Assembly (NCBI GenBank): GCA_026770705.1
Contig: JANJGN010000021.1
Location: 88,474,001 to 88,538,000, forward strand
Direction: 5' to 3'
From: Isurus oxyrinchus
Taxonomy: Eukaryota
DNA length: 64,000 bases
A model generated the notes under the pieces. It saw only the letters and a list, made by a program, of their open reading frames with translations, was not told the DNA's origin and searched no databases. This document shows positions 14,775 to 58,559 of this stretch, in pieces. The translations under genes and the position numbers were made by a program. Positions within the stretch are counted from its first letter, which is position 1; each line of letters begins with the position of its first letter.

Positions 14775-14841
14775 ATGGGTCGCCTGTTGCCTCCCCTGTT
14801 GCTGCTCGGCCTCTTCCTGCTGCGGCCGCTCTATGCGGAAG
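14775..14841 (+). CDS. Exon 1: signal peptide MGRLLPPLLLLGLFLLRPLYAE
   Basis: ATG followed by a Leu-rich hydrophobic core; phase-1 donor G|gtgagg; lies in a CpG-rich patch. Confidence 0.85.
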
Positions 14842-20800: not shown

Positions 20801-23800
20801 CTCCCGTCCCTACCTAGCTTCCCCCACCATCCCTCCGGCCCCTCAGCAAACCCTCCCCCAACTTCACCTCGTCTCTTCTTTCTCCCGATGGAGTGCTGCA
20901 CTGCCAAAGATGCTTTCAGATCAGATGTTAAGCCCTCTTAGGTGATGTAAAAGATCTCATGGCAGTAGAAGTGTGGGGGGCGGTGGGTAGTCAATTGTGT
21001 CATGACTAATATTTATCCCACTTATTCATCACAAAAACAGATCATCTGGTCATTGTCACATTGCTGTTTATGGAAGCTTGCTGTGCACAAATACAATAAT
21101 AACCGCATTTCAAAAAAAGGGTTTCATTGGCTCTGAAAGGGAGTTGGGTGCTCTGAGGTGGTGAAAGACACTTACATAAATGAGAATCTGCCTCTCATTC
21201 CCTCTAGATATCTGTTGGCATAATGTGTACAATTTTCCTTTGTAATCGCTGCTGAATTTCACTGCTTCACTATCACACTTTAAAGGAATAAATTGATTGT
21301 TTTATGTTAACCAGTTGGAAGACGAGAAGTGTTTGCTGCCATTGGTTCATCGGTTTTACTGGATCCTGAACATGAAGCTAATCTCAGCATCAATGAAATT
21401 ATTTGGAATTTCACTGGCAGCAATGGGAACCTTGTGACAATCTTGGATTATGTACCAAACCACCCAATGGAGGAGCCAAATAACCATTTCAAATCTCGCT
21501 TACATTTCAATTCATCGACTGGGTCACTGATATTAAATCATTTAAATCCTAGTGACCAAGGAGTTTATACCATCATTGTAGATGACAAATTGATAAGGAT
21601 TACAGATTTGATTCTTATTGGTAAGTGATTTCAATACTTTATTACTTTGAAATACATTTGATGTACATTTCAGCTCATGTACTGTTTACTACTTGCGAAC
21701 ACTGTCGTAGAATAAGAATAGGCTATTCAGCCCGTCAAACCTATTCTGCCATTCTATCAAGGGAGTGATTCCAGAGCGTGGGGCATTGGTGACTGAAATC
21801 TCAGCCGCCAATGATGAAATGTGTAAGAGACCAGAGCGGGAGGAATGATTTTAGTGGGAGGAGCTGGGGTGGAGGAAGAGTTTTGAAGAATTGGGGGAGT
21901 TTACAGAGATACAGAGAGTCAAAAAAATGATGAGATTTCCACATGTGGCAAGAATTTTAAATTGAAGGCATTGATGGACAGGAGCCAATGCAGGCCAGCG
22001 AGGACAGGGGTGTTGGGACTGGGACATGGTACAGGACAGGATGCAGGCAGCAGAGGTATAGATGAGCTGAAGGATGGAGGATGGGAGGCAGCCAGGAGAG
22101 TATTGGAATAGTGGAGTCTGGGGGTGAGACGGGTGATGGGTGAGATTCTCAGCAGCAGCTGGATTGAAGTAGAGGCAGAGTCAGGTGCTGTTGAAGGTAG
22201 ACAGCCTTTGTGATCGGATTAAGGTGTCAGGAAATTCAGTTTAGGATTGAAGTATTATGATGTACCTGATGCAGCTCCAACAACACTCAAGAAGCTTGAC
22301 ACCGTCCAGGACAAAGCAGCCCCGCTTGATTGGCACCCCATCTGCAAACATTCACTCCCTCTGCCACCAACGCAGAGTGACAGCAGTGTGTACCATCTAC
22401 AAGATGCACTGCAGGAACTCCCCAAGCCTCCTGAGACAGCACCTTCCAAACCCATGCCCTCTATCAACTAGAAGGACAAGGGCAGAGAACACATGGGAAC
22501 ACCACCACGTGGAAGTTCCCCTCCAAGCCACTCACCATCCTGACTTGGAACCATATTGCTGTTTCTTCACTGTCGCTGGGCCAAAATCCTGGAACTCCCT
22601 CCCTAACAGCACTGTGGGTGTACCTACAGCACATGGAAAGCAGAGGTTCAAGGAGGCAGCTCACCACCGCCTTCTTAAGGGCAGCTGGGGATGGGCAATA
22701 AATGCTGGCCTAGCCAGCGATGCCCACATCTCAGGAATGAATATAAGAAAAAAACCCTGTGAAGGACAGAGCTCTCGTTAATTAACTACACCAACATAAT
22801 GTGTAGCAATGACATCCTCACATTCAGACCTGCTTATCTGACCATTTTTTCTCTTCCACAGAGCCACTGGCAGAACCTTTGATCAATGTTACCTTTGTGG
22901 ATACCACCATTGAACTAACCTGTAAAGTGTCTGTGGGGAAAGCGAGTTCCATTCTGTGGAGGAAAGATGCTGAAGTGATAATGAATGGTCAACATTATCA
23001 GTTGGTGCGAAACAACAGCAAGTTGATTATTTCTGAAGCCAGCAAATCAGACTGTGGAATCTATACTTGCACCATGGAGAACCCTGTTAGCAAGAAAAAC
23101 TATTCATATTCTCTTACTATTTACGGTGAGTCATGCCTGTCAGTCAATTCAATTGATTAGTTAAAATCTATATTCCACTGCTGTGCCTCACACTTAGTCT
23201 ATCCAAAGATGTTAACATAGGAATAACATTATATATTTTTCATGGCAGGAAGGAGGAGTAGAGTAGAAAACTGTAGACTGGTAGTGTACAATTTCCTGAT
23301 GTACTTGACAGGGTAGATGTTGAGATGATGTTTCCACTAGGGGAGGAATCTCAAACTAGGGGACACAGTTACAGAATAAAGGGGCACTCATTTAAAACTG
23401 AGATGTGAAGGAATTTCTTCCCTCAGTGGGTAGTGAATATCTGGAATTCTCTCCCTCAGAGAGTTGTGGAGGCTAGATCACTGAACGTATTTATTGAGGA
23501 CGGAGATGGATTTTTGAAATATCAGCGAGTTGATGTCTATGAGGAACTGGCATAAAAGAGGAGTTGAGGCCTGGGGCAGATTAGCTGTGATCTTATTGAA
23601 TGGCGGGGCAGGCTTGAGGGGCTGAATGGCCGACTGGTGCTCCTTTTTCTCATGTTCTTATGTACCTTCCCAGCATTTACTGAGAGGGTCAAAGTGGAAA
23701 ATCACAGTTTAAGTCTGCATTCTCCTGAAGAGTGCAGCCAGTTTACCCAATGTGGGAAACGAAATACTGCATTCTCATTCACTCATAGAGTCGAGGTTGG

Positions 23801-26800
23801 GGCAGAACAGAGAGTACTTTTCACTGGCATCTAAGCACACGGTATTTCACCTTGAAGAGGTGAGGGTGTCTGGTAGGAAGTTCCTATTTCCAACTTGCAA
23901 GATCCTTGATAACAACACTTTCAGGCAAAGACGAACCTGTTTGCAATTTGTTTACTGCTTTCAAAGTAGCATAAGTTTGAAATAAATTTTCTATTTCAGG
24001 TGCTGCCCTGCTGCATTGCTACACAAAGATATTATCCATCACTGCGCTGATCACTGCTGCTGCTGCCTTGGCTTGTAAAATAATTTCATCCTGGTATCTG
24101 GCCAAAATAATAAGTAAGAAAAACATATTATTCGTGCAACTTTAGTGTTGAAAATTTTAAGCTGTTGTGGTTTAATATTAGAGACTCTGTGAAACATTTA
24201 AATGTGACACCGATGTCATTTTAAATTCTGGTTCTTTGTATGGTGTGATTAATTTGAATGTGAGAATATTAGTTGCTGGGGTAATGTTGATATGAAACAA
24301 AAGCAGAAAATGCTGGAAAAACTCAGCAGGTCTAGCAGCATCTGGGGAGAGGGAAACAGATTTAACGTTTTGAGTCCGTATGACCCTCCTTCGTGAATTT
24401 GTTTATTGTTCCAGGTCTTCAGTTTCTTCAACTTGAGCTACGAGCCTTGCAGTTTATCTTTCTTATCGGTGCGTTTGTGTGTTGGATATGGGGTGAAGGT
24501 ACTGCATGTGTTCCTGTTTCTTTACTCCCAGTTGGTAATTGTATTTCTACAATGTAGTACCTCTGACAAATTAAATTCCAGTTTAATCCATTATTGGGTG
24601 GAGAACTCGGATGAGTTCTGATTTGGGACCCTCAAATTGTGAATTTAAGTTCGATAAATTTGCCAATCTGAGTGGCGGACATCAAAAAATTTACACTTCA
24701 TTGTAAAACCGAACCAGCTCACTAAGGTTGGGAATTTACTTGGAGCTGCAGCCACTGATTCCCATAACTTCACCACAGCTCCGAAGATGTTGGAATCAGC
24801 TGTAATGAGTATTGCCCATCTGCCCTCAGTCTTCTGACAACAGCAATCCCTGCAAAACGTATGTGTAACTGATTGGTCTGGCCGCATCAGCTCTCTCTGG
24901 CCTATCATCCCCAAGCATCACACCATCCTGATCTTTGTAAGCTAAGGTAATGTTTCTGCACACTTTGCCAGCCTGCCCACGTGCTTCTTGCTAGCCCTTC
25001 ATTAAATTGTGTCAGCAGCTTCTTGTAACCCCTCTGCATTTATGTTCAAACTCAGGCTGAGTAACTTGGATTTCTCAGACATTACACCTGTTAAGTGTGA
25101 CGAAGCCATGGTAGCCCCATGTCATCGGCTCCTCATGACCTTCAGAGTTTGCAAACTCAGCCCATGTTAATGTGCATCATACAGTTGTCCATTAACTTTG
25201 ACAACTTGTCCATTTCTCTCAGCGGCATGCTGAGATCCTCACTATTGGTCCCATGCTCAGTAATTCTTGTGACTGTACTCCTTGCTCCCTCCACCTGGGA
25301 GACACATTAGCCTCATTCCACAGGGAATCGGTACAAACTTCAATCTTCACGATTCCCTTTATCTGGCCAGTCGCACATCAGTAAACCACCGACAGGTTGA
25401 GGATACGTTCCCTTTAACAAGGCCAAATTGGCTTCGTGTCCAGTGATTTGAGGGAGTAGTTGGCCAGGCGAGGTGCAATTCATTGTGAACCCTGAGAAGG
25501 AGAGATCAGGCAAGGCGCTTGTTACTGGATACATAATCCAGAGGCCTGGATCAATTACCTGAGGACATGAGTTCAAATCCCAATATGACAATTGAATTTT
25601 AATTCAATAAAGTAGGAATGAAAAGCTTGTTTCAGTAATGGTGACCATGAAACTATTAAATTGTTATAAAAAGCTATCTGGCTCACTAATGTCCTAAAGG
25701 GAATGAAACCTGCTACCTTTGAACAGACTGCTCTATATGTGACTGCAGACCCAAACAATGTGGTCGGCTCCCCTCTGAAACTACCTAGCAAGCCGTTCAG
25801 TTGTCAGGAAGGTGGCCCCACCACCACCTCCTCAAGGTCAATTAAGGATCGGCAATAAATACTGGCCTCGCCAACATCCCAAGAACGAGTAACAAAAAAT
25901 GTTGGTCATTCTACCTGATCGACAGCACATTGTGCACTGTTTGAAATTTCCTGATTTAAACCATGAACAAAGGGGTTGGTGACCGAGCTCCCTCCTGTTC
26001 CTCACTGATGTAACTTGCCAGTTATGTGGTATGAATGTTGCCCATTACTTGTCAACCCCAGACTCAATGTTATCTAGGCTCAGTAACAACTGCTTGTATT
26101 TATATGGCACCTTCAACAGAGTAAGATGTCCCAAGGCACTTCATAGGGTTACCAAACAAAATATGACACCAAAGAGAGAGATTCTAAGGAGTATCCAGGA
26201 GGAGGTAGGGAAGAGGAGAAATCAGGGAGGAATTCCAGAGCTTAGAGCCTAGGCAGTGGAAGGCATGGCTACTAGTGGTGGAGGGATTAAATCAGAGATG
26301 CCTAGAAGACCAGAATCAGAGAAGCGCAGAGATCTTGGAGGAATATAGGGCCGGGGTAGGTAACAGACATAGGCAAGGGCGAGACTACAATATCATTGCA
26401 TTCTCCAAGCTCACAAAAGATGGATTGGCCAACAAAGGCAGCCAGTAAAACACTTCAGCATTAATAAGATGAAAAATCGTTGCATAGCTGGACACTACCT
26501 AGCTTTCTCTGGTGAAAGGTCGTTGACCTGAAATATTAACACCAATGCTCTCAGTAAGTCAGGCCACATATGTGGAGAGAGAAAAACAAATATTTTCTAT
26601 TTTTATTAGTCTAGACTAACCTCTATTAACCTAAATATTTGTTTTTTTTTAATTAAAAACCTCCATAAGTGGGCAGAAAATGAAAAATAGCACTGGCTTA
26701 CCAAGATAAAAACAAAAAAACTGCGGATGCTGGAAATCCAAAACAAAAACAGAATTACCTGGAAAAACTCAGCAGGTCCGGCAGCATCGGCGGAGAAGAA

Positions 26801-29800: not shown

Positions 29801-32800
29801 AGTGCGCTCTTTTGCGCATGCGCACGAAAAAGCGCACTCATCTCCCTGAGGCTAAGTGCAGCCTCAGGGAGATTGCCTCGAGTTTTAAAAATATTAAAAA
29901 TAGAGAAGAGAAAGATCCCTTACATGTCCCCTCATGTGACAATGTCACATGGGTTGGGACATGTTCATAATTTCAATAACAACTTTATTACAATTTTTAA
30001 AACCTTACGTGAAACTTCATCCGGCTGCTGGACGAGGTTTCATGTTTTTTCTAGATGCCGCCGGGGCTCCTGGCCGACCTGCCAACCTTAAGGTTGGAAG
30101 GGCAGGTCCTTTAATTGGTTAATCGATGTTGTCAATGGCCTCAATTGGCCATTGACAGGCCGGCGGGCCCGCAGCTGATTTTGCTGCGCCGCGGCCTTCC
30201 TGAAAATTTAAATGGGGCGCGGTGACGTCGGGGGTTCTGCCCGACATAATCTCGCGTCATTTTATGTGTCGGCGAGCGGGCCCCGCTCCCCTGCTCGCGG
30301 ACAGTAAAACCCTATCCATTAAGCTTTGTTTCAAAAAGTACATAATTTATTAAAAACTGGGAAGTAGAAGGCAATGTTACCATCTATTGGCCCCATGCCT
30401 GTATGATGTTATCAGCTACTGAGACTCTTCTGGAGTTCACAAGATGGCTGGTCAATGTTCTGTCCTCCATAGTACAAATTTCAGGTCTGTCTGAGATATT
30501 CTGCCAACGCAGCAGCGTGCTGATACTGACTAATAACAGTTGGAGAAAGATTAACGGAGTTCAGCATAACCTCATTCAGCTTCCTCCTCGATAAAGAAAG
30601 AAAAGAACAGACCATCCTAACCAGTCAACAGGATAGAAATGTGTTTTCTGTGCCCCATTGGTGTTAGCATTAGCAGAGTTATAGTACTTGTACTATAAAT
30701 TACCGCCTGTTGGGGACTGCATGGTCTGAATCGGGAATGCTGACATGGAGTGTAGTCCAATTCTACTTCTCTACATGTCTGTACACTAGGAACATTGCCC
30801 ATTGGCTCCTCTGAGGAAATAATTTACTGTGATTAAAGTGAGGACCAACCTAGAAACAGACCATTTGGCCCAAATGGTCTATGCTAGCACTTATGCTTCA
30901 CATGAACCTCTTCTCAACCCTCTTCAACTTATCCAATTTCCACCCCCTTCTATTCCTTTCTCCCTCATATGCTTTGCTGGAGTTGAATCTACACTATTCC
31001 CCTCAAGCACTCCATGTGGTAGAGAATCCACATTCTCATCACTCCCGGGGTAAAAAACAAAGTTTCACCTGAATCCTTATTGGATTTATTCATGATTATC
31101 TTATATTTATGATCCCAGTTTTTGTCTACCCACAAGTGGAAATATTGTCGTTGTGTCTGCCTTATCAAAGATCCCAGCCTGTCCTGACAGTTATCACCTT
31201 TCAGTTCCGGTATAATTCTTATGAATCTCTTTTGCTCCTTCACAAGTGTTTCTATCAAATGCGGTCTACCTGAAATTCAGTACAAATTTAGTGTAACTTC
31301 TCAGAGTTTCCATTCCTCTGGAAATGGACCCAGTGCACTTTTTAAAGGTCTTTATTTGTCATGAGTTTTAATAACTTGTGTATCTGTACCCCTGGCTCCC
31401 CTTGCTCCTCCATCCCATTTAAGTTTTTATTTTCCAAGCAGTATGTAACCTCCTTATTCTTCCTGCCAAAACTAAGCAGCTTTCCAAACATTCTGTTACT
31501 TGTTCCGTGACTCCACATGCTTTGACCCTAATCAGGAGCCTTATCAAAGGCTTTTTAGAAATGGGAATATACCTTCTGCATTATCCTTGATAGTACCTTA
31601 AACGTTACCATGAACAGTCGTTTGCTGCTGCGCATTCTTGTGGTCTCATTATGAAAGGCACAGTGGCGAATTAAATAGCAATGGCATTTACTTTCTAATC
31701 TATGAATGTTTATAATGGTGTTCACTGTTTTTGTTCTTTCAACAGGAGCTTCTGAAATGACAGTGTGCACGTTGGTGTTTTTGTGTCTCCTGCTGATAGT
31801 TCTCTTATTTTCGTCTTGTCGTATGAAGGCCTGTGACACAAGCTTAAATAAGATTTGGTTTGTCAAACGTAAGTTCAGACACAAGTTTTATACGCACATG
31901 ACACTATCAAAACCCTCATGGTTAATGTGGGGGGTGGGGGGTGGGAGGGGGTGTGTGGAGGTTAGTGAGATTCAGATTCTGTAGTGGGGAGCGAGTTGAG
32001 AGGGTGACGAGGCAGCCTGCACATGCACTGCCTCGGATTTGGATCTGCTGAGTCCCAGTAAGTCTTGGAAGGTGGGCAGAGGAAAGTCCAGGAGGACCCC
32101 GAGTGTGGGCTGGCTGACCATCTGGTCTTTTATTAAAAGAAGCTGGAAGGAAATTTGCATAGCACCTACTCCATCCCATTATTTTGCGTATTTCACGGAA
32201 GGGTCCCAAAACAGGTGCTGGATCCTTCACTTCATATTTAAGTTGATCCACCGCTGATTGCAGGCATTTGCCAGGAAAGCCTAAAAGCAGAGAGGACCAA
32301 TAGGAAAGTGGCCAAGCAACCAGAAGTGGATTAGGAGCAGAACCAGGTGCCCAGAAATTGGCATACACTGCAATGTTTTCATGACCAAGAAGCAGACAAC
32401 GCGCACACATTTCTACCCCAGTGTTTCCAAATACCTTATGCTGAATGTGGCCCACATCATGTGTTAGAATATCCAATTTGATTTGAATCATTAGTCAGGA
32501 CAACCTGTGGTTCTCCGACTGGAGCATCAGTCTGCTGCTGTCAAATTTCATTTCTGGGTGAAAATCACTGCTTCCAGTCCTCAATAAAGCCATGACCCAT
32601 CACTTGCCCTGGATTGGAGGCACAGGTCAAGAATGAGTGATGGGTAGAGTTTCTCCATTGCTTGCTCTAGATGATGAGGTCATCACCAGCAGAGGCATGA
32701 TGGGTTGAATGGCCTCTGTCTATGTTGTAGTTATTGTGAAATAAATAATGACTGAAGTATACAGAAATGAAAGAACCCAAAATGGTGACATAAATCACTT

Positions 32801-35800
32801 TTTTATTTCACCACCTGAGTGACCAGGAACAAACTAAGAGCAAGGGCTGACAAAAATAACATGAGGTTTCTCGAGTTCTTCCCTGCTTTTGCAATTTTAA
32901 ATGGAGTTACCTGGAAAGGACCGAGAACCATCATTGTAGGAGATTCCGACTCTCTGGAACACGCTTTGTGAATCTCATGGGGCGTATTTGTGATCCCAGC
33001 AGAACTAGGCTGAAAATGTTGTGCACTCTAAATTGTATAAAAAGACTTGCATTTTCATAGCACCTCCCACAACCTCAAGCAGTTCACAGCCAACAAATTA
33101 CCCCCTGAAACCTCGTTACTGTTGTAGTATAGGAAGCAGCAGCTAGATTGAGCACAGCAAGCTCCCACAAGCACCAATGAAATAAATGACCAGGTAATTG
33201 TGTTTGATGTTTGAAGGATTAATGATGACCAGGACACCAGGAGACCTCCTGGTCCTTCTTTTAGCATAGTGCCATGGGACTTTTTATATCTAGCTGATGG
33301 AGAGTAAGGGACCTCAGTTTAACGTCTCATTCAAAACACAGCGCCACTGACATTGACACACTAGCCTAGATTATGTGCTCATGTCTCTGTAGCGGGTTTG
33401 ATCCCACAACCTTCTGATTCCGAGGCAAGAGTGGTCCCAGCTGAGCCATGGTTGACACCTGCACATGCTCAAGAACCCAGGAGCAGGAGAAATAGGAGCT
33501 GGAGAAGACCATTTGGCCTCTCAATCCTGCTCCGCCTTTCAAGTCTGATTGTGGCTGCTCCTCATATCCCCTGATTCCCTGAGAGAAATTTGTCCAGCAT
33601 ACAGGAACACAGCCACAGTGGAGGAAGATAATGGGGCAAATGTTTCTGCCCCTGGGGCTATTGGATCGCCTGGTCACAGCAAATACAGGGCATTCAGACA
33701 GAGAGGCGCACATGTCCATAATAGTGGCCGCTTGATTTTCTATTTGTTGACTGCAAATGGATGGGCTATCTGGCAGACTGCTAGGGAGGTGCGGTTCTCC
33801 CCTCCCGATTGTCCTGCGTTCGCTGGATCCAGGTGATCCAATAATCCCAAGCTCAGGACCAGGAAAATTATCCCTGTACTTTTCTCAACCAGTTGCATTT
33901 CCTAAGGTACAGCAGGAGGCAGNNNNNNNNNNNNNNNNNNNNNNNNNNNNNNNNNNNNNNNNNNNNNNNNNNNNNNNNNNNNNNNNNNNNNNNNNNNNNN
34001 NNNNNNNNNNNNNNNNNNNNNNNNNNNNNNNNNNNNNNNNNNNNNNNNNNNNNNNNNNNNNNNNNNNNNNNNNNNNNNNNNNNNNNNNNNNNNNNNNNNN
34101 NNNNNNNCTGTTTTGTTTGTTTTCAGCTTGTCATCTGATCTTAATGGTTGCAGTAAGTCCATTGGTTGGAATCATTGTGATGGGTCTGTCAGTGAGCCTG
34201 ATTGCAGAAACAGTGAAACGAGCTGGTGAATGTTCAATGATAAAATTGTCGCCAACAAACTAATTCTAGAAGCAACATCCCGTCAGGAATAGTTTGATCA
34301 GGAGAGCTAACTATGCAGTCATTTTTGCCAAGGTTTTCATTGGAAACTGTTGAATTATTGAAGTTTACATTGCAGAAGACCATTTGGCCCATTGTGTCTG
34401 TGCCAGCTTTGGCAAGACCAATCCAATTTTAATCCCACTGCTTGGCCCTCGACTCAATGCCATTTGCTTCAAATATTTATTCACTTTTCCTCGAATGATG
34501 TAATGGTTCTCAGCTCAATAATTCCCTGTAGTAAAGTATTTTATGCTTCAAAAACTCTTGTGTAAAAAAATCACTCCTAAACAATCTTTTTACCCAAGAT
34601 AGTCTGGAAGTGATGACACAATTTACAGAGCAGAAACAGACCATATGGGCCAGCAGTTCATGCTGGTGTTTATCCTCGACTCAAGTCTCCTCCCCATCCA
34701 TCCTCATCTAAATCTTATTGACAATACCCTCTGTTTCCTTCTCCACTAGCTTCCTCTGAAATGCATCTATATGATTCACTTCAACGGCTGCTCATGGTAG
34801 CACATTCTACATTCTGCCTGTGGGTAAAGAAGGTTCTTTTGAAGTCCTTATTTGATTTCTTGGTGGCTATCTCATATTGATGGCCTCTAGTCCCTTTTCC
34901 ACAAAAGGAAGCACTTCTTATGTGTTTCGTATCAAAATCTAGCACCACTTTTAATACCTCTATTAGGTAACCTGTTCAATAATTCCTTTCTGAGGGAAAA
35001 AGAGATCAACAATACTGACTTCCCAAATGAAATTTGGATGGATCTGGAGCTTGAGATTTGAACTCCTGCATTTCAGACTATTGGATTATTTGCGTTCAGT
35101 GAATATAGGAAATTGAGAGCAGCAAGGTCAGAGAATGGATGCATCAGTCTGAGAGCTAGAGTCCACCACAGGAAGTGGGGGAAGTTCTGTTGATTCTGGG
35201 CCACTATTGGTGGTCAGGCCAATGGTTGGACACCCAGGATCGAGTTGGCACTTCACCATTTTAGGCCATGGCTGATGTATGGTGTGGAGGACATTGAGTA
35301 GGGGAAATATTTGAATGTAGTTCGATTCTTCAAATAAAAAGAGGAAGAATTTGTTTAAAACGCTTGGAGCTTGTGTTGTTTTCCCAGACTAGGAAGCAAT
35401 CTTATGGGATTGGCTGGTATGATGTGGTGGGCATTACGGATACAGGGCTGCAAGGGGATCAGGACGGGGAGCTAAATATCCAAGGATATGCATCCTAATG
35501 AAAAGATAGGCAGGTTGGCAGAGGGGGTGGGGTTGCTTTGTTAGTAAGAAATGAAATTAAATCGTTGGCAAGAAATGATGTAGAGTCAGATGATGTAGGA
35601 TCTGTGTGGGTAGAGTTGAGGAACTGCAAAGGTTAAAAAAACCATAATGGGAGTTATGTACAGCCTCCGAACAGTAGTCAGGATGTGGGGCACAAGATAC
35701 ACCAGGAGATAGAAAAGGTGTGTAAGAAAGGCAAGGTTACTGTGATCATGGGGGATTTCAATATGCAGGTACACTGGGAAAATCAGGTTGGTAGTGGATC

Positions 35801-38800: not shown

Positions 38801-41800
38801 ACCTAACCATGTTTTATACAGTTCCAGCATAACCTCCCTGCTCTTGTATTCTATGCCTCGGCTAATAAAGGCAAGTATCCCATATGCCTTCCTAGCCACC
38901 TTATCTACCTCCCTGCCAACTTCATGGATCTGTGGATATGCACACCAAGTTCCCTCTGATCTTCAGTACTTTCCATGGTCCTATCATTCATAGTGTACCC
39001 TTGCCTTGTTAACCCTCACCAATTGCATTACCTCACACTCCTTTAAAAATTCATTCATGGGATGTGCGCTTCACTGGCCGGGCCAGGATTTATTGTCCAT
39101 TCCTAGCTGCTGTTGAGATGGTGCTGGTGAGCTGCCTTCTTGAACCACTGCAGACCCCATGGTGGTTATTCCTACTGATACTGTCATGGACAGATGCATC
39201 TGCGGCAGGCAGGGTGGTGAGGATGAGGTCAAGTATATTTTTCCCTCTTGTTGCTTCCCTCACCGGGTTAAATTTCTATTTTGAATTTCTATTTTTGATG
39301 CTGTGAGTTTTGGATGATGCATTCTATTCAAATATAGGGTAAGAGTTATCAAACTTTTAATTGTGGTTGCTTCAATTAATTAAATGTAGTATGTAAATTC
39401 CTACAATGATGTAAATTGAGCACCTTAGCTTGTCTGATCAGGAGTGCCTGGATTGTAGGTGCTTCAGGGAATCCAGTGTAAAGATAATTATTTTATTCAC
39501 TCCACAATCCCCCACCACCACACGCTTAAAATAGCAGAAGATGGAATGCTCTACAAACACAACACAGATTTTTTGTTTCAGTCCAGAGTATTGAAACTTG
39601 GTTCACAAAGTCTCAATGGAAATTTCAAGAATGCGCTGTCCATCAATTAAAATGAATGGGCAGAAAATTTGGCAGCATCTGCCTGGATTTACAAAGGGCG
39701 TTCCCAGTGAGCGACTCTTTTGCGCTTGGACATTCTGAATGGTTAAGTGTATCAGCAGCTATCATTTCCAAAGTTATATCACAGTCGCTGGGAGTCAAAG
39801 ACATATTAATTAAAGCAGATGTTCCTTCCATGCTGCTGCTCACAGTACACAGTCAGATGATGTGTTTTTTTCTTACAAGGACGGTGGATACAATTACACT
39901 GTGGAGCTGAAGTTTTTAGATCATGACATCTTCATTGCTGTCAAATAAAGGCCTGGTGTGTTCATACAAAAGCCAAACAAGAAAGTCCAGATAATCTGAC
40001 TCTGGCAGATTTGCTCCCTGGACAATCTCCTCCCTACAACAACAGCCTATATTTATATAGCACTTTAGCGTAGTAAACATCTCAAGGCACTTCACAGAGA
40101 CACTGCTCCTGCTGCTGCTTGTGGCTGCTCCTACCAGGAGATCTGGTGTCATGATATGTCACACTCATCTGGCTTGTGCCACCCTTACACGCCAACTTTA
40201 GTTCACCTGCAACAGGTCCATGATGTCCAGCGTCCGACTACACCTAGATCAACCTTTTCCTGCTGCGTTCCACTTTGCTGTCTAGAAGAGACGTTGTGAA
40301 ACAAAATAGGACATGGAGCCACGTAAGGAGTTATTGGATGATCCAAAGCTTGGTCAAAGAGGCAGGCTTTAAGGAGTGTCATAAAAGAGGAAAGAGAGGC
40401 AAAGAGATTTAGGGAATAAATTCCAGAGATTAGGGCCTTGGCAGCTGAAGGAACCATCAACTAAAATGGGGGATAAGTGCCTTTATATTGTGTTTTTTTT
40501 GGAAGGGTGAAAGAAACATGTGAAGCATGATGAGCAAGAAATGCCTCCTGGCGGCTGGAGTTTTCAGTGTTTCTTGTCGTCTTGGAAGTGAACGTTGGGA
40601 AATTCTGCCCATTATTTTCAGATAATTAAAATTGACGATCGGAAACCAGGAGCAGGAAATGCATGACTTCATGATGCATGCTTCCAGCTAAGACTAGAGC
40701 GCTAAAGGACAATGTCCTGGCCAGTCATTTTATTAAAATAAAGGAGATGCCTATCATACCAACTGTGCTGGAAATAATAATCCAAGCAGCAGAATTTGGG
40801 ACCCAAGGATTTCTAATGCTGGTGATAAAACCAGGAGGCCTCTAATAATATTTCAGTTACTCTGTATAATTTTAATAACCATGTATTTACATGAAAACAT
40901 CTATTGCAGCTGAAGGATGTGAGCCAGCAGCCAATCTACAAAGAAATATAATTCCTGCAGTGGGGATACTGTTGGTGTCCTTTGTTATACTCTTTGCACT
41001 TCACATCATATGTAAGTAATGTTAATACAGTTAGAGGTTGTTTACAAATGATTGTAATGGATACAAGATGCTTGGTTTTCATGGAGTTGGGAAGACTCAT
41101 TGGACCTTTAAAAATGGCAGGTGGGACCTGGTTGTGGAAGCTCCACCCCATTTCCAACATGTCCAATTTTAGTGGTTGGGGAAATGGGGCAGGGCATGAT
41201 TTACACAGCAGCGAAACCTAAACTGAGCAAAGCCATTTGAACTCAGTGCGAATTCACTTTTGGCTGTTGTAAGGGCCTTAATCCGCAATGTGAGAGTCAC
41301 AAATTGCTATAAGTATAAACGCTCTTCAAGACAGATAATGTTTGTATAACTATCATGATCTGAAGTATTTTTTTAAATCTTCCACTCTTTAAACTGTAAA
41401 CAACAACTGGCTGCAGCTGTTAGTGGCTGTTAAAAATTACCTTTGTTGAATTAATTTGATTAACAGGCCAGTCGGTGTAGCATCTCATCATGCAGTATCT
41501 TTCACATTCCTTAAGGGCTATTATTATGCCATTATGACTTTAGAAAGTTACAATTATCTCAGTAGGGGGTCGGGGGGTGGGGGGGGGGTTCTGAGTTCAT
41601 GGTTTGATTAACAGCTTAAAGAGTCTATTAATATATTAGCTATGTTTGATACGGGGTATGAATAGAAGTTTGATGTGGGGTATGAATAGAAGTGTATTTG
41701 ATTTTGTAAGAGATTAATGACTTGATATTTAGAAGATCTGAATGGCTTCATGAATGGGAGTTTTTTTCACTATCAACTGTGTAGAGTGAAAGCTCTCTTG

Positions 41801-43217
41801 GATTTCTAGAAATGTATTTTATTTCATCTCCACATAGTTCCTAAGGTCTGCCCATGGTGCATACTAGGTGTTGGCACAGAGTTGGCATGGTGGGTATGAG
41901 GGGCCATGGGGGCGAATGGAAGAATGAGTTGACATTGAGTTGGCATGATGTGAGGAGCCAGTAGCGTGGGTGGGGGCATGAGTTAGCATTGAGTTGGCAC
42001 TGAGGCCTGTGCAGGGGGCATAGGAGTGTGTGGAAAGGGTGAGAGGATGTGTGAGGTGAGAGCAAATGGGCCTACTGCTTTTATTACAACTGAGATGAAG
42101 TCCCACAGAACTGGGACAGGCCTAACCAGCCCACCTTGGCACTCACCCATGGTCACTAGGATGTGCTCTTTGAGTGTAATACTCCCGTGAAATGGATTTA
42201 GCAGAGTCATTAAAATAAGCTGGCCAATAATATAATGGGCAAGGGAATTTCATATGAGCTGCTAAAGCTTAGTAGGTTGCATGGTAAAAATTGATGGAGA
42301 AAGTACTTTGGGAAAGATACACTGACTAATATTCTAATCATATATTTAGTGAAACCCTTGCTCAGTTCACCTTTCATTCAATATAATACGTTGTATGTTT
42401 ACATCAACAGATAGAAAATTGAATAAACAAACAGCTGGAACGCCACTTATAGCCCCCAGTGTAAAAGATCCTGATGGACTTTATCATTCTGTAAGTACTT
42501 GGACAAAATACAAGTGACAGATTAGCCTTTGCTCTCAAGTTTTCTGTAAATGGACAATCCTGTAGTTGTCACACATTTTTGTCATCAGAAATGGAGGATT
42601 TTGTTTCATTCTCTGTTCAAGAATAATTACTGTGGAGAATGAGGGATTCCTGTGTCTACTGAGCAAAATGCTTGTATGCCACTATTCTTACTGCAAGTGG
42701 AGGTGTTTAATTGCAGTGATACACAGAAAAAGAGGATTATTTCTCCTAAATTATGTTCTGCTGAACATTTAATAGGGAAATGAAACATTAATTAATATTT
42801 AGTGTTTAACACCAGAAAGTTGAAATTTATGGTCTGAAAATTGCAGTAAATGACCTATTGGAAAGAACCTAAACTTTAGAAAGTAGAGAAAGATATGTGT
42901 TTAGTAATGATCTAATTTGATGTATAAAATACTAAATATTGCTGCATGGCCCATTGTAAGCATATTTATTAGACCTTGACAGGATGTTTCTGTTTAAAAG
43001 GCAAGAACTCAACTGAAAGCATAATTTTAAAAAGAGGCAAATCAAATTCAGGCTACTGATTGTTACTGATTTGTTTATTCATTTTTGTACATTTAATGAA
43101 AATAAACTTTTCTTCAGCTATTTGAAGACATTTCAATTCACATTTTTATCTTTCTTTCTGTAGGAGCTGAAGGAACACTTCTTAAAAACCACAGTTACTG
43201 ATGAAGAACAACTTTAA
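14775..43217 (+). CDS. Spliced gene model, 10 coding exons, 430 aa: signal peptide-IgV-IgC2-5xTM-cytoplasmic tail (CD2/CEACAM-like ectodomain, CD47-like five-span membrane domain). Exons: 14775-14841, 21315-21620, 22862-23125, 24000-24113, 24415-24498, 31746-31868, 34127-34225, 40910-41011, 42411-42490, 43164-43217
   Basis: All nine introns are GT-AG, with phases 1,1,1,1,1,1,1,1,0. Exon lengths sum to 1293 nt (431 codons) with no internal stop, ending in TAA at 43215-43217. The domain order is coherent. Confidence 0.8.
15140..15485 (+). mobile_element. Older PLE terminal-repeat fragment with a decayed hammerhead
   Basis: CTGAAGA-A-GGGTC-atatg-GACTC-CAAA at 15388-15415, followed by the ctctccacagatgctg..gagtttttccagc tail shared with other copies. 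Confidence 0.7.
15640..16260 (-). mobile_element. CR1 3' fragment
   Basis: LYRTLVRPHLKYCEQFWFPYLRKD..EFRRVRGDLVEVYKI. Confidence 0.9.
16290..16744. mobile_element. MITE fragment(s) related to the 7148 and 9941 elements
   Basis: Shared ttaaggccctcaattgggg core and aaatttctgcc terminus. Confidence 0.55.
17360..18190 (-). mobile_element. Decayed CR1 fragments
   Basis: Similar to 6480-7140. Confidence 0.75.
17667..17759 (-). mobile_element. PLE 3' tail fragment nested in a CR1 element
   Basis: Near-identical to 26707-26798. Confidence 0.85.
18200..19560 (-). mobile_element. Second, decayed Penelope-like family: GIY-YIG C-terminus in tandem partial repeats
   Basis: YVGRMSQRLADHIKQH..LEATYVNTQGPVLCRQKE (18733-19110) and a second LEAIYIHTQSPVLCRQKE (19363-19560); repeated ctgattggttg 3' blocks; minimal hammerhead relics. 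Confidence 0.8.
18331..18457. mobile_element. Short MITE (~127 bp) with Harbinger-like TIRs
   Basis: GGGCAGAGTTTTATGGC / GCCATAAAATACCACCC. Confidence 0.65.
19580..20470 (-). mobile_element. CR1 5'/EN region fragment
   Basis: Similar to 9750-9940 and 10660-11000. Confidence 0.7.
20470..20885. repeat. C/T-rich low-complexity tract
   Basis: Direct inspection. Confidence 0.85.
20890..21190 (+). mobile_element. Deu-domain SINE (SacSINE1/AmnSINE-like)
   Basis: gatgtaaaagatctcatggca..ctggtcattgtcacattgctgtttatggaagcttgctgtgcacaaat; related fragments at ~6385-6460 and ~11680-11830. Confidence 0.7.
21315..21620 (+). CDS. Exon 2: IgV domain without the canonical B-F cysteines (CD2/SLAM/CEACAM N-domain type)
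   Basis: VFAAIGSSVLLDP..IIWNF..FKSRLHFNSSTGSLILNHLNPSDQGVYT; acceptor ccag, donor G|gtaagt; 306 nt. Confidence 0.92.
22260..22745 (+). mobile_element. 3' end of the tRNA-headed LINE family (see 53520-58065)
   Basis: High similarity to 57605-58065; further copies on - at 43380-43712, 51940-52454 and 53115-53292. Confidence 0.85.
22862..23125 (+). CDS. Exon 3: IgC2/I-set domain
   Basis: ELTCKV..ILWRKD..LIISEASKSDCGIYTCTMENPVS; the NPVS motif is typical of CD2/CEACAM C2 domains; pyrimidine tract+cag acceptor, donor G|gtgagt. Confidence 0.92.
23300..23662 (+). mobile_element. CR1 3' end
   Basis: Similar to 37860-38215 and 56610-56960. Confidence 0.85.
24000..24113 (+). CDS. Exon 4: TM1 (GAALLHCYTKILSITALITAAAALACKIISSWYLAKII)
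   Basis: Acceptor ttttctatttcag, donor A|gtaaga, 114 nt, phase 1-1, hydrophobic. Confidence 0.8.
24295..24393 (-). mobile_element. PLE-type tail with a partial hammerhead in intron 4
   Basis: Reverse complement contains gggtcatacggactcaaaacgttaa..cagatgctgctagacctgctgagtttttccagc. Confidence 0.75.
24415..24498 (+). CDS. Exon 5: TM2 (SLQFLQLELRALQFIFLIGAFVCWIWGE)
   Basis: Acceptor tttattgttccag, donor AAG|gtactg, 84 nt, phase 1-1. Confidence 0.72.
25520..25895 (+). mobile_element. tRNA-derived SINE sharing head and tail with the 53520 LINE
   Basis: B-box gagttcaaatccc, core ctcactaatgtcc..tgtgactgcagaccc, tail ggcaataaatactggcc; other copies on - at 5700-6070, 47780-48090, 50905-51160 and 51540-51880. 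Confidence 0.75.
26804..26842 (-). ncRNA. Minimal type I hammerhead-ribozyme-like motif in the PLE left arm
   Basis: Reverse complement reads AGTT-CTGTCGA-A-GGGTC-atgag-GACTC-GAAA-CGTC-AACT. Confidence 0.55.
27140..28840 (+). CDS. Penelope-like reverse transcriptase plus GIY-YIG endonuclease, N-terminally truncated, stop-free, 566 codons
   Basis: RFYLLPKIHK, FTMDVQSLYTSIP, GIAMG, RYIDD, Cys linker PCPRKRCNPC, and VYCIRCSQCGLLYIGETKRKLGDRFAEH. Confidence 0.92.
   Translation: MKIMEIIHQAIVSRTVTDLISSGDLPPTASNVIVAQPQTARFYLLPKIHKQNCPGKPIVSACSCPTELISHYLDSLLSPLVQSLLTYIRDSSDTLRHINNFQFPGPNRLLFTMDVQSLYTSIPHQDGLRALSFFLEQRPEQSPSTTTLLRLAELVLTPNNFSFNSSHFLQIKGIAMGIRMGPSYACLFMGYVEHSLFQSYSGPLPQLFLRYIDDYFGAASCSRRDLEKFINSASNLHPSIIFTWSISDTSLPFLDLSVSISGDRLSTNIHYKPTDSHSYLDYSSSHPASCKDSIPFSQFLYLCRICSDDATFKNSSSDTSSFFLNRGFAPTVIDRALNRVRPISRASALTPSPPSQKHDRVPLVLTYHPTSPRIQRIILRHFRQLQHDATTKHIFPSPPLSAFRRDRSLRDTLVHSSFTPYSSTPSYGSTPCPRKRCNPCTFTSSLLTVQGPKHSFQMKQHFTCISPNLVYCIRCSQCGLLYIGETKRKLGDRFAEHLRSVRKNDPNLPVACHFNTPPCSHAHMSVLGLLRCSSEAQRKLEEQHLIFQLGTLQPSGLNIEFNNFRS
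29248..29286 (+). ncRNA. Minimal type I hammerhead-ribozyme-like motif in the PLE right arm (variant core CUGUCGA)
   Basis: AGTT-CTGTCGA-A-GGGTC-atgag-GACGC-GAAA-CGTC-AACT: stem I, stem II, palindromic ACGT at stem III, GUC site. Confidence 0.55.
29618..30317 (-). mobile_element. Harbinger-type MITE, same family as 978-1675, opposite orientation
   Basis: TIR GGGCTGAATTTT; the same internal palindromes in reverse order. Confidence 0.8.
30840..31610 (-). mobile_element. Old CR1 fragment
   Basis: IETLVKEQKRFIRIIPELKG. Confidence 0.65.
31746..31868 (+). CDS. Exon 6: TM3 (GASEMTVCTLVFLCLLLIVLLFSSCRMKACDTSLNKIWFVK)
   Basis: Strong pyrimidine tract+caacag acceptor, donor C|gtaagt, 123 nt, phase 1-1. 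Confidence 0.8.
33045..33460 (-). mobile_element. Deu-domain SINE with a tRNA-like head
   Basis: Reverse complement has A/B-box-like ggctcagctgg..gggatcaaaccc, followed by the Deu core. Confidence 0.72.
33923..34107. other. Assembly gap (185 N)
   Basis: Run of N. Confidence 1.
34127..34225 (+). CDS. Exon 7: TM4 (PCHLILMVAVSPLVGIIVMGLSVSLIAETVKRA)
   Basis: Acceptor ttttgtttgttttcag just after the N gap; donor CTG|gtgaat; 99 nt, phase 1-1. Confidence 0.75.
35375..38215 (+). mobile_element. Near-complete CR1 ORF2 (EN plus RT) with stops and frameshifts, plus 3' tail
   Basis: IMGDFN, KSPGPDG, WKIANVTPLFKKG, YLDFQKAFDKVPH, GVPQGSVLG, KFADDTK; ends in tcttatgg repeats. Confidence 0.95.
38240..39040 (-). 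mobile_element. CR1 3' fragment, tail-to-tail with the preceding CR1
   Basis: ALESVKRRFTRML..RRLRGDLIEVYKIM. Confidence 0.9.
40910..41011 (+). CDS. Exon 8: predicted extracellular loop with Cys plus TM5 (AEGCEPAANLQRNIIPAVGILLVSFVILFALHII)
   Basis: Acceptor ctattgcag, donor T|gtaagt, 102 nt, phase 1-1. Confidence 0.78.
42411..42490 (+). CDS. Exon 9: cytoplasmic tail (YRKLNKQTAGTPLIAPSVKDPDGLYHS)
   Basis: Acceptor catcaacag, donor TCT|gtaagt; phase 1 to 0; basic residues follow TM5 (positive-inside rule). Confidence 0.75.
43164..43217 (+). CDS. Exon 10: terminal coding exon (ELKEHFLKTTVTDEEQL*)
   Basis: Long pyrimidine tract+tag acceptor; phase 0 matches exon 9. Confidence 0.72.
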   Translation, partial: ELKEHFLKTTVTDEEQL

Positions 43218-45530: not shown

Positions 45531-45830
45531 CTCCATACATGTGGTTCTGCAGGAGCAGCATTGCCTGGCACTTTCACACGGGGCACATCTTCCACCTTTT
45601 CAGCTGTAAATAAGGGCTTAAGACAGAAACATCAGTGTCCACGCAAACACTAATGATCAATATGTGAAAAAGAAAAATGCACCACAAACAAAAGATCCTC
45701 AGCCATGGTTACAAAGATGGACTTTATTTTGTCCAAAACAAAAACACACACCACTTGTTAGCGATCACAAAAATATGGGTCCCTATTCTAAGGCCAACAC
45801 AAAATCACCAGTGACATACCTGTGGAGTGC

Positions 45831-58065: not shown

Positions 58066-58559
58066 CACCCTCCATGCTAGGTCACACTGAAATGTCTAAT
58101 TATATCTCCTCTCAAACTAAGGAATTAGTTGTCCCCAGTTACAGCAAAAGCAGTTTAAGCTGCTTTCTTTAATTAGCTAACTTTTGCTGCACTTGCAGTA
58201 GAGCCCAGAAAACCCTGCTTAAGGCTGGGAAATGTAGAATTTAGACAGTAACTTTCAGCTCAATGTTAACTGCAAACCAAAATTCGATCTTCACAAAGAA
58301 ATTGACATTCCCTTACTCACCGAAGCTGCCAGCAAACAATTTAGTTTTGACATCATTCATAAAGTTAACGCCAACCACACAAGCTGCACTAGAACCTCAA
58401 AGGTTTGTACATTTCCTCAGCGTTGAAAGTTTGCTGTATGGTTTTGTTTTTCTAGAATGAAAGTGACAATTTCTTGGAAATTTGTCATCATCTTTGCTTC
58501 ATGTTTTCTTCTGCAATATTATGTATTTGTGATCATTGTCCTGGGTCACAATGAACTCT

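What the first reader, a model, noticed from the sequence alone, without database searches (positions are those of the whole stretch)
14775..43217. Two-Ig, five-pass membrane protein: CD2/CEACAM-like ectodomain on a CD47-like membrane domain
Seen: ten phase-consistent exons give 430 aa arranged as SP-IgV-IgC2-TM1..TM5-tail, with each TM on its own phase-1 exon and basic residues (YRKLNK) after TM5, implying N-out/C-in. Established: CD2/SLAM/CEACAM/HEPACAM proteins are single-pass or GPI-anchored. The well-known Ig plus five-span protein is CD47, which has one disulfide-bonded IgV, TM segments spread over several exons and small tail exons. Inference: this is either a divergent CD47-related family with a swapped or extended ectodomain, or an independent exon-shuffled Ig-5TM receptor. 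Automated annotation would probably call it single-pass or uncharacterized. It may be an undescribed immune or adhesion receptor family of cartilaginous fish.
Basis: partly seen in the sequence, partly recalled or inferred. Interest (0 to 1): 0.9.

Follow-up and report, generated by a model that had tools for sequence, protein, structure and literature searches.

The report
Shark two-Ig, five-pass membrane receptor gene
This is a real, expressed shark gene for a cell-surface protein with two immunoglobulin domains on a five-helix membrane base, a layout known so far only from CD47; it belongs to a large unnamed family found in sharks, rays and at least storks.

Summary
Ten AG/GT-bounded, phase-consistent exons (14775-43217, + strand) give an open 430-codon frame: signal peptide, a cysteine-free IgV, an IgC2, five hydrophobic exons (one helix each, all phase 1) and two tail exons. 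Contigs from probable RNA runs join IgV>IgC2>TM1>TM2 exactly as predicted. The model aligns without gaps to 430-aa NCBI models in Carcharodon (95.8% identity) and Cetorhinus (90.9%). The N gap lies in intron 6, 19 nt before an intact acceptor.

The gene belongs to a large family annotated only as 'uncharacterized', 'HEPACAM-like' or 'CD48-like'. The family occurs in many sharks, rays and skates, and also in storks, so it is not confined to cartilaginous fish.

The ectodomain is CD2/CD58/CD48/SLAM/CEACAM-like by fold and profile. The five-helix module matches no Pfam family, including the CD47 TM model, and no PDB sequence. Homology to CD47 is therefore unsupported but not excluded. The layout is CD47-like: a cysteine in the membrane-proximal Ig domain co-occurs with one in the TM4-TM5 loop, and the tails are short and lack tyrosine motifs. 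Single-pass paralogues share the TM5 exon, which suggests that four TM exons sit in front of a conventional stalk/TM exon.

The sibling note s1-871793 covers the same DNA.

The parts
14775..14841 (+). Exon 1: start codon and most of the signal peptide (MGRLLPPLLLLGLFLLRPLYAE), phase-1 donor GTGAGG
   Evidence: N-terminus matches orthologue P0161
21315..21620 (+). Exon 2: IgV domain without any cysteine (CD2/CD58/CD48/SLAM/CEACAM N-domain type)
22862..23125 (+). Exon 3: IgC2/I-set domain with the canonical Cys145-Cys194 pair and an extra Cys189 (codon 23053-23055) in the E-F turn motif SDCGIYTC
   Evidence: Pfam I-set 7e-14; joined to exon 4 in an RNA-derived contig (X4 record 28); Cys189 conservation
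24000..24113 (+). Exon 4: helix TM1 and the start of cytoplasmic loop 1, phase 1-1
   Evidence: junction 24113|24415 seen in an RNA-derived contig (X1 record 7); helix 215-245 in the model
24415..24498 (+). Exon 5: helix TM2, ending in the conserved WIxxEG outer loop. Donor GTACTG at 24498, not the GTGAAG at 24492. This exon is skipped in isoforms of relatives
   Evidence: RNA-derived contig reads to 24499 without mismatch; a gap-free 430-aa alignment needs this donor; isoform P0164 lacks it
31746..31868 (+). Exon 6: helix TM3 and cytoplasmic loop 2, donor GTAAGT, phase 1-1
   Evidence: tblastn with P0161; helix 282-307
33923..34107 (.). Assembly gap (N) inside intron 6, 19 nt upstream of exon 7; not filled
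   Evidence: no indel at the exon 6/7 junction against two orthologues
34127..34225 (+). Exon 7: helix TM4, phase 1-1
   Evidence: 94% identical to P0161; helix 319-352
40910..41011 (+). Exon 8: outer loop 2 with the conserved GCEPA motif (Cys356, codon 40918-40920) and helix TM5. Homologous to the stalk+TM exon of single-pass paralogues. Skipped in X3 isoforms of relatives
   Evidence: Cys356 conservation; single-pass paralogues; isoforms P0222 and P0223
42411..42490 (+). Exon 9: completes Tyr of YRKLNK (basic stop-transfer) and the first part of the cytoplasmic tail; phase-0 donor GTAAGT
43164..43217 (+). Exon 10: last 17 codons (ELKEHFLKTTVTDEEQL) and the TAA stop
   Evidence: a conserved ELxEPFLK-like motif is seen in relatives

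Best explanation
An intact, transcribed gene of a lamniform shark encodes a 430-aa type-I-start, five-pass (N-out, C-in) immunoglobulin-superfamily receptor. It is the orthologue of Carcharodon XP_041069454 and Cetorhinus XP_078422380.

It belongs to a large, unnamed and undescribed family. The family has many members in each elasmobranch genome sampled, and it is also present in storks, so it probably dates back to early jawed vertebrates.

Shown:
- The exon structure, and splicing of exons 2-5.
- The orthology.
- The family and its spread across species.
- An ectodomain of the CD2/CD58/CD48/SLAM/CEACAM kind (a cysteine-free IgV plus an IgC2).
- A conserved five-helix module with no detectable relative.
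- Short tails without ITIM, ITSM or ITAM motifs.
- Single-pass paralogues that share the TM5 exon.

Inferred, origin: four extra phase-1 TM exons lie between the IgC2 exon and a conventional stalk+TM exon. This arose either by insertion of those exons or, in the single-pass paralogues, by their loss.

Inferred, mode of action:
- The distal IgV makes homophilic or heterophilic trans contacts, as its structural relatives do.
- The proximal IgC2 is pinned to the TM4-TM5 loop by a Cys189-Cys356 disulfide, the design principle of CD47's C15-C245 bond. This fixes the ectodomain on the helix bundle.
- Signalling runs through lateral partners of the bundle rather than tyrosine motifs.
- In-frame skipping of single TM exons tunes topology.
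For: - Gene model and open frame.
- Spliced contigs joining 21619|22861, 23124|23999 and 24113|24415 in four runs from two studies.
- Gap-free identity of 95.8% and 90.9% to 430-aa NCBI models in two other lamniforms.
- The IgV exon alone finds 333 proteins at E<=0.001, and many of those 390-480 aa long have 4-6 C-terminal hydrophobic segments.
- A TM-only HMM built here hits 90 of the 203 proteins fetched by then and the stork proteins at 4e-14.
- Source names and organisms.
- The family profile's best two-domain PDB sequence matches are CEA and CEACAM1 (1e-49, 4e-33).
- AlphaFold2 model with five helices, mean pLDDT 73.8.
- Cys189 and Cys356 in 49 non-redundant members: both present in 39, neither in 8, only Cys356 in 2, only Cys189 in 0. 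Both are present in the stork proteins.
- Tails have a median length of 46 aa. ITIM-like motifs occur in 2 of 49; ITSM and ITAM in none.
- Single-pass paralogues align to the TM5 exon (ECEPAA..Q..IP + TM + basic residues).
Against: - No read evidence in this genome for junctions 1-2 and 5-6 through 9-10, because the reads tool is capped at one call. These junctions rest on the orthologue models and on splice consensus.
- TM5 and outer loop 2 are modelled with low confidence (pLDDT 40-60).
- Model coordinates are not returned, so the distance between Cys189 and Cys356 could not be measured.
- After phylogenetic correction the cysteine co-variation is only suggestive: 5 independent pairs, 3-4 concordant, 0 discordant, p about 0.125.
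- Single-pass paralogues keep the stalk cysteine mostly without Cys189, so that cysteine may serve an inter-chain bond instead.
- No ligand, tissue or function is known.
- DeepTMHMM was not available.
- The TM module alone could not be searched by fold, because the Ig domains filled every result list.
Confidence: 0.62

Rival explanations
1. The family is a divergent sister of CD47. Its five-helix module, the Ig-to-outer-loop-2 disulfide and the one-exon-per-helix layout would be inherited from a common Ig-5TM ancestor. An extra distal IgV would have been added, and the sequence would have diverged beyond recognition.
For: - Same order of parts: Ig, five helices, short tail on small exons.
- CD47's constant exons encode the ectodomain and the multi-spanning domain, and its tail exons 8-13 are small and alternatively spliced (PMC10902115).
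- In both proteins the cysteine sits in the TM4-TM5 loop (CD47 C15-C245, PMC8410850; here Cys356).
- Foldseek against viral models aligns the natural IgV+5TM isoform colinearly over 289-383 columns with poxvirus CD47-like proteins at E 5e-7 to 6e-5.
- The Pfam CD47 Ig model weakly touches the membrane-proximal Ig domain in 15 of 52 members, best E 4e-4, below the curated cut-off.
- Tails lack tyrosine motifs, as in CD47.
Against: - The Pfam CD47 TM model (PF04549) was not reported for any of the 17 proteins whose own hit tables were read at E<=1-10, and it is not among the 25 families that most of the 52 members match.
- phmmer of the IgV+5TM isoform against all PDB sequences at E<=10 finds no CD47.
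- No CD47 chain appears in the top 50 of Foldseek or VIA-align.
- The poxvirus matches have TM-scores of only 0.18-0.27 and rmsd of 16-26 A, and part of their score comes from the IgV.
- The distal IgV is CD2/CEACAM-type without a disulfide, unlike CD47's.
- The TM5 exon is shared with ordinary single-pass paralogues.
Confidence: 0.25
2. The five-pass product is a minor or non-functional splice form. The working proteins of this locus would be shorter isoforms, either single-pass or with four spans, or a secreted ectodomain.
For: - All TM exons are phase 1-1, so any subset can be skipped in frame.
- NCBI models in relatives include isoforms lacking the TM2 exon (P0164, P0170, P0171), the TM5 exon (P0222, P0223) or the IgC2 exon (P0174).
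- Single-pass paralogues exist.
Against: - The X1 isoform with all exons is modelled in three lamniforms.
- RNA-derived contigs here include TM1 and TM2.
- All five TM exons are conserved in order across sharks, rays and birds. The TM region is 97% and 90% identical to the two orthologues, as conserved as the Ig domains.
Confidence: 0.08
3. The gene is a pseudogene or an assembly or annotation artefact.
For: There is an assembly gap in intron 6. The introns are large and full of transposons.
Against: - The frame is open for 430 codons and all nine splice-site pairs are intact.
- The locus is transcribed and spliced.
- The alignment to two orthologues is gap-free.
Confidence: 0.02

Closest known systems
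CD47 (integrin-associated protein), the one described Ig + five-TM receptor
   Same: - Signal peptide, Ig ectodomain, five membrane helices, N-out/C-in.
- A short tail on small 3' exons without tyrosine motifs.
- A cysteine in the TM4-TM5 outer loop that can tie the membrane-proximal Ig domain to the bundle.
- The helices are encoded by a run of small exons.
   Different: - Two Ig domains instead of one.
- The distal IgV has no disulfide and is CD2/CEACAM-like.
- No sequence similarity to the CD47 TM Pfam model or to CD47 in the PDB, and no fold match obtained.
- Outer loop 2 is about twice as long as in CD47.
- A multigene family rather than a single gene.
- The partner cysteine lies in the E-F turn of an IgC2, not near the N-terminus of an IgV.
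CD2/SLAM family (CD2, CD58, CD48, 2B4, NTB-A/SLAMF6, SLAM)
   Same: - An IgV without the canonical disulfide followed by an IgC2.
- Weak Pfam Receptor_2B4 hits in 29 of 52 members and SLAM hits in 10 of 52.
   Different: Those proteins are single-pass or GPI-anchored, and SLAM receptors signal by ITSM motifs. This protein has five spans and no ITSM.
CEACAM family (CEA, CEACAM1)
   Same: - The best PDB sequence matches spanning both Ig domains, for the family profile, are CEA at 1e-49 and CEACAM1 at 4e-33.
- A disulfide-free N domain plus IgC2.
- A fast-expanding multigene family.
   Different: CEACAMs are single-pass or GPI-anchored and carry ITIM, ITSM or ITAM motifs in the tail. None of this applies here.
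HEPACAM / HEPACAM2 (the name given by automated annotation)
   Same: An IgV plus IgC2 ectodomain.
   Different: From general knowledge, HEPACAM is single-pass with a long cytoplasmic tail. The name comes from a best hit on the Ig domains and ignores the five-helix module.

Membership tests
CD47 | Five-helix multi-spanning domain recognised by the Pfam CD47 TM model (PF04549) | tested here: not met
   PF04549 did not appear in the hit tables of the 17 proteins read at E<=1-10 (14 family members, 3 stork proteins), nor among the 25 families that most of the 52 members match. HMMER filters drop most matches above about E 0.1. phmmer against the PDB found no CD47.
CD47 | The same three-dimensional arrangement of the five helices as in 7MYZ | tested here: inconclusive
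   Ig domains filled all result lists. Poxvirus CD47-like models align colinearly, but with TM-scores of 0.18-0.27. A TM-only model could not be made, because no reference exists for that part alone.
CD47 | A single IgV with its own disulfide as the whole ectodomain | tested here: not met
   There are two Ig domains, and the IgV has no cysteine.
CD47 | An inter-domain disulfide from the Ig domain to the TM4-TM5 loop | tested here: inconclusive
   Cys189 and Cys356 are conserved and co-occur (39 both, 8 neither, 2 and 0 single). The phylogenetic sign test gives p about 0.125. No coordinates or chemistry were available.
CD2/SLAM family | A disulfide-free IgV plus IgC2 ectodomain with the CD2-type fold | tested here: met
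CD2/SLAM family | A single TM helix or GPI anchor; ITSM in SLAM receptors | tested here: not met
   Five helices. No ITSM in 49 tails.
CEACAM | N-domain IgV plus A/B-type IgC2 similarity | tested here: met
   The family profile matches CEA at 1e-49, CEACAM1 at 4e-33 and CEACAM6 at 1.7e-20 across both domains. Foldseek gives 25-26% identity to CEACAM1.
CEACAM | Single-pass or GPI anchorage with ITIM, ITSM or ITAM tails | tested here: not met
HEPACAM | A single TM helix and a long cytoplasmic tail | tested here: not met
   Five helices and a 45-aa tail.
Unnamed IgV-IgC2-5TM family defined here | Match to the TM-only HMM built from 52 members, the WIxxEG outer loop 1 and the GCEPA outer loop 2 | tested here: met
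   The window's TM region finds 43 of the 186 proteins fetched by then at E<=1e-3. The motifs are present in the window model.

The most novel reading that the evidence does not exclude
Vertebrates have a second, ancient family of Ig-superfamily receptors mounted on a five-helix membrane module. The family is conserved from sharks to birds, expanded to many genes per genome in elasmobranchs, and invisible in the literature because annotation names it after its Ig domains. It would be either the long-missing sister of CD47 or an independent invention of the same design: an Ig domain disulfide-pinned to the TM4-TM5 loop. Its CD2/CEACAM-type variable tips would make it a multigene cell-cell recognition system.
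Probability: 0.5. Interest if true: 0.8.

Novelty: new variant of a known kind. Interest (0 to 1): 0.68.

Why it matters
[quoted passage not shown] A whole family with the same overall design but a CD2/CEACAM-type ectodomain would bear on several questions.

- It gives a natural comparison for what a five-helix base, and an Ig-to-loop disulfide, contribute to an adhesion or recognition receptor.
- It opens the question of CD47's origin to test by profile, fold and intron comparison.
- It adds an unstudied, expanded receptor family to shark and ray immunogenetics. That family has paired five-pass and single-pass forms sharing similar ectodomains, and in-frame exon skipping that changes topology.
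- It shows that automated names ('HEPACAM-like', 'CD48-like', 'VEGFR2-like', 'contactin-6-like') hide the membrane module.

Tried and rejected
- **Donor at 24492.** The stronger-looking donor for exon 5 was rejected: an RNA-derived contig and the orthologues require 24498.
- **Other family genes in the window.** tblastn with seven family proteins found none.
- **Pfam on single TM exons.** Nothing found.
- **Word-indexed search with the TM region.** Only close relatives came back, because the candidate list was saturated.
- **Fold searches of the whole model and of the natural IgV+5TM isoform** (Foldseek PDB, VIA-align wide, VIA-align second look). Every list was filled by Ig domains, so the TM module stayed untested.
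- **ESM Atlas on residues 213-400.** No feature hit. Structure hits were unrelated bacterial helical proteins at TM 0.36-0.53. The tool was unreachable three times before that.
- **Weak Pfam hits on the TM part.** MARVEL, SUR7, Claudin_2, Cation_efflux, DUF2070 and others are inconsistent between members and were treated as noise.
- **Internal duplication of TM exons.** hhalign probabilities are all under 5%.
- **Tyrosine signalling motifs.** Absent.
- **Joined 430-aa model.** It was built and compared only inside scripts. It was not sent to any search or folding tool.
- **CD47 sequence.** None could be obtained by any tool, so no profile-profile comparison with CD47 was run.

Full report

I rebuilt the gene from the sequence alone. 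The start codon at 14775 opens a hydrophobic leader that ends at a GTGAGG donor (14841). It is followed by exons at 21315-21620, 22862-23125, 24000-24113, 24415-24498, 31746-31868, 34127-34225, 40910-41011, 42411-42490 and 43164-43217. Every acceptor has a pyrimidine tract and AG, and every donor starts GT[AG]. Introns 1-8 are phase 1 and intron 9 is phase 0. The joined frame is open for 430 codons and ends at TAA 43215-43217.

Pfam calls exon 2 a V-set domain (1.2e-8) and exon 3 an I-set domain (7e-14). The short hydrophobic exons hit nothing on their own.

The N run 33923-34107 lies in intron 6. Exon 7 begins 19 nt after it, behind an intact acceptor. Its true length and the continuity across it are unknown. 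No coding sequence is expected in it, because two orthologues align across the exon 6/7 junction without an indel.

**2. Transcription and splicing**

The runs are labelled as probable RNA and are kept as contigs. Several contigs skip the introns exactly:
- X2 record 9 joins 21619 to 22861.
- X4 record 28 joins 23124 to 23999 and runs on past 24113.
- X1 record 7 joins 24113 to 24415 and continues without mismatch to 24499, with 19 further letters beyond.

The last contig shows that the weaker GTACTG donor at 24498 is used, not GTGAAG at 24492. Only that choice gives 430 aa. So IgV, IgC2, TM1 and TM2 are spliced as predicted, and TM2 is spliced onward.

Junctions 1-2 and 5-6 to 9-10 were not seen in reads. 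They rest on splice consensus and on the orthologues.

A separate, deeper contig (depth 174) is about 96% identical to the first two thirds of the IgV exon. It points to an expressed close paralogue located elsewhere.

**3. Orthologues and family**

The IgV exon alone, scored against 1.84 billion cluster representatives, found 333 proteins at E<=0.001. Many of those 390-480 aa long have four to six hydrophobic segments in their C-terminal half.

The window model aligns gap-free over all 430 residues to two NCBI models:
- XP_041069454, 'hepatocyte cell adhesion molecule-like isoform X1' of Carcharodon carcharias: 412 of 430 residues identical.
- XP_078422380 of Cetorhinus maximus: 391 of 430 identical.

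The window therefore comes from a lamniform closer to the white shark than to the basking shark. The full exon structure is reproduced independently by NCBI's pipeline in two species.

An HMM of the TM region alone, built in a script from 52 members, hits 90 of the 203 proteins fetched by then. The named sources are:
- Sharks: Carcharodon, Cetorhinus, Mustelus, Scyliorhinus (2 species), Heterodontus, Heptranchias, Pristiophorus, Chiloscyllium (2 species), Hemiscyllium, Stegostoma, Rhincodon.
- Rays and skates: Pristis, Hypanus, Hemitrygon, Mobula (2 species), Amblyraja, Rhinoraja.

There are several to many loci per genome, often on one scaffold. The names are 'uncharacterized', or borrowed from the Ig domains: HEPACAM-like, CD48-like, CD276 homolog, VEGFR2-like, contactin-6-like.

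The profile search also returned a stork cluster (Mycteria americana, Ciconia boyciana, C. maguari). These proteins have IgV-IgC2-5TM and match the TM-only HMM at 4e-14 over nearly its whole length. They keep the family motifs, including both extra cysteines. So the family is not restricted to cartilaginous fish.

**4. The ectodomain**

The IgV has no cysteine at all, which is the hallmark of CD2, CD58, CD48, SLAM and CEACAM N domains.

The AlphaFold2 model of the Carcharodon orthologue has mean pLDDT 73.8, with the Ig domains mostly 80-94. Its best structural matches are:
- 2B4 and NTB-A.

Foldseek adds CD2 and CEACAM1 at 25-26% identity. By sequence, the family profile's best two-domain PDB matches are CEA (1e-49) and CEACAM1 (4e-33).

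**5. The membrane module**

The model has helices at 215-245, 250-278, 282-307, 319-352 and 359-396, one per exon. Confidence is good for helices 1-4 and poor for outer loop 2 and helix 5.

Charge distribution fits N-out/C-in. There are three or four Lys/Arg in each inner loop and after TM5, none in outer loop 1, and three in outer loop 2 (read).

The conserved features are a WIxxEG outer loop 1 and a GCEPAxNLQ outer loop 2. Across orthologues the TM region is as conserved as the Ig domains, at 97% and 90% identity.

Nothing known matches the module:
- No Pfam family, and in particular not PF04549. This holds for the 14 family members and 3 stork proteins scanned one by one at E<=1-10, and PF04549 is not among the families shared by the 52 aligned members.
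- No PDB sequence at E<=10.
- No usable ESM Atlas neighbour.
- hhalign gives no sign that the five TM exons are duplicates of each other.

Fold searches could not isolate the module, because the Ig domains filled every list. This was true even for the natural IgV+5TM isoform P0174, which I folded for that purpose. Against viral models that isoform aligns colinearly with poxvirus CD47-like proteins over 289-383 columns (E 5e-7 to 6e-5). The TM-scores are only 0.18-0.27 and the rmsd is 16-26 A. That shows the same order of parts, not the same fold.

**6. A CD47-like tether?**

In CD47 the ectodomain is tied to the TM4-TM5 loop by the C15-C245 disulfide, which is needed for function (PMC8410850).

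Here the IgC2 carries an extra cysteine (Cys189) besides its canonical pair, in the E-F turn motif SDCGxYxC. From general Ig-fold knowledge, that turn lies at the membrane-facing end of the domain. Outer loop 2 carries Cys356.

In 49 non-redundant members both are present in 39, both absent in 8, only Cys356 in 2 and only Cys189 in none. The stork proteins have both.

On a tree there are five independent contrasts in Cys189. Cys356 changes the same way in three or four and never the opposite way. That is too few contrasts for significance (p about 0.125). The disulfide is therefore a well-motivated prediction, not a result. The sibling first-stage note s1-871793 proposes the same idea on this same DNA.

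**7. Origin**

Shark paralogues of 269-282 aa (P0218, P0219, P0184, P0185, P0041) have the same IgV-IgC2. P0218 and P0219 are 59% identical to P0161 over the matched part. After the IgC2 they continue directly with a stalk 'ECEPAA..Q..IP', one TM helix and basic residues. That stretch is homologous to exon 8 here.

Exon 8 is therefore an ordinary IgSF stalk+TM exon, and exons 4-7 are four additional helices placed in front of it. Either they were inserted once, before the shark-bird split, or the single-pass genes lost them. The single-pass forms are much closer to the shark five-pass genes than the stork five-pass proteins are, so loss within elasmobranchs is at least as likely.

This picture fits exon shuffling better than inheritance of a CD47 cassette, but it does not exclude the latter.

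Because all TM exons are phase 1-1, any of them can be skipped in frame. NCBI models of relatives include isoforms without the TM2 exon, the TM5 exon or the IgC2 exon.

**8. How it most likely works**

This section is inference. The protein is a cell-surface recognition or adhesion molecule.
- The disulfide-free distal IgV makes trans contacts, as in CD2-CD58, 2B4-CD48, SLAM-SLAM and CEACAM1-CEACAM1.
- The IgC2 is held on the helix bundle.
- The 45-aa tail has no ITIM, ITSM or ITAM. Across the family these occur in 2, 0 and 0 of 49 tails. Output probably depends on lateral partners of the bundle, as is held for CD47 and integrins.
- Gene number, rapid divergence of the IgV and the coexistence of five-pass and single-pass forms with similar ectodomains recall paired immune-receptor families.

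**9. Novelty**

The protein models exist in public databases, but only under borrowed or empty names. Seven full-text searches found no description of an Ig-5TM family other than CD47. Two CEACAM evolution papers that I read for the relevant terms mention no multi-pass forms.

I rate it a new variant of a known kind: an IgSF receptor with a CD47-like layout. It remains open whether it is CD47's sister or a convergent design.

**10. Limits**

- DeepTMHMM was not available.
- Model coordinates are not returned.
- No CD47 sequence could be obtained.
- The joined 430-aa model was handled only in scripts and was not sent to any search or folding tool. Searches were done exon by exon by reference, or with the orthologue P0161.

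Noticed in passing
window 21316-21513 (reads only): Contigs from the probable RNA runs (X2 record 8, depth 174; X1 record 1; X4 record 23) match the IgV exon at about 96% identity, with shared differences at 21390, 21393, 21408, 21439 and 21451. This indicates a more highly expressed close paralogue or allele located outside this window.
   Followed up: no
window 27140-28840 (+), intron 5: A 566-aa open frame with reverse transcriptase (RVT_1, 5e-7) followed by a GIY-YIG nuclease (4e-4). This domain pair is typical of Penelope-like retroelements.
   Followed up: partly
window 36436-38126 (+), intron 7; also 55528-55878 (+): Fragments of non-LTR retrotransposon reverse transcriptase (RVT_1 at 9e-21 and 1e-12), broken into several frames.
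   Followed up: partly
window 44413-46517: A Harbinger/PIF-type transposon just downstream of the gene. It has a DDE_Tnp_4 transposase frame on + (3.7e-34) and an adjacent 228-aa frame on the - strand that matches no Pfam family.
   Followed up: partly
relatives P0164, P0170, P0171, P0222, P0223, P0174: Predicted isoforms in Carcharodon, Cetorhinus, Heterodontus and Scyliorhinus skip the TM2 exon, the TM5 exon or the IgC2 exon in frame. Four-span forms would put the tail, or later loops, on the other side of the membrane.
   Followed up: partly
relatives P0218, P0219, P0184, P0185, P0041: Single-pass shark paralogues have a similar IgV-IgC2 and a stalk+TM homologous to exon 8 of this gene. They keep the stalk cysteine but mostly lack Cys189.
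   Followed up: partly
relative P0175 (Carcharodon LOC121291109): This paralogue's signal peptide is 91% identical and its Ig domains 75-78% identical to the window gene, but its TM region is only 40% and its tail 25% identical. This mosaic similarity suggests exchange of 5' exons between family members.
   Followed up: no
window 20370-20940 and 58533-59250: Long proline/glycine-rich low-complexity stretches (PPPPP or GGGG runs, depending on the strand read) give spurious long ORFs on both strands.
   Followed up: no
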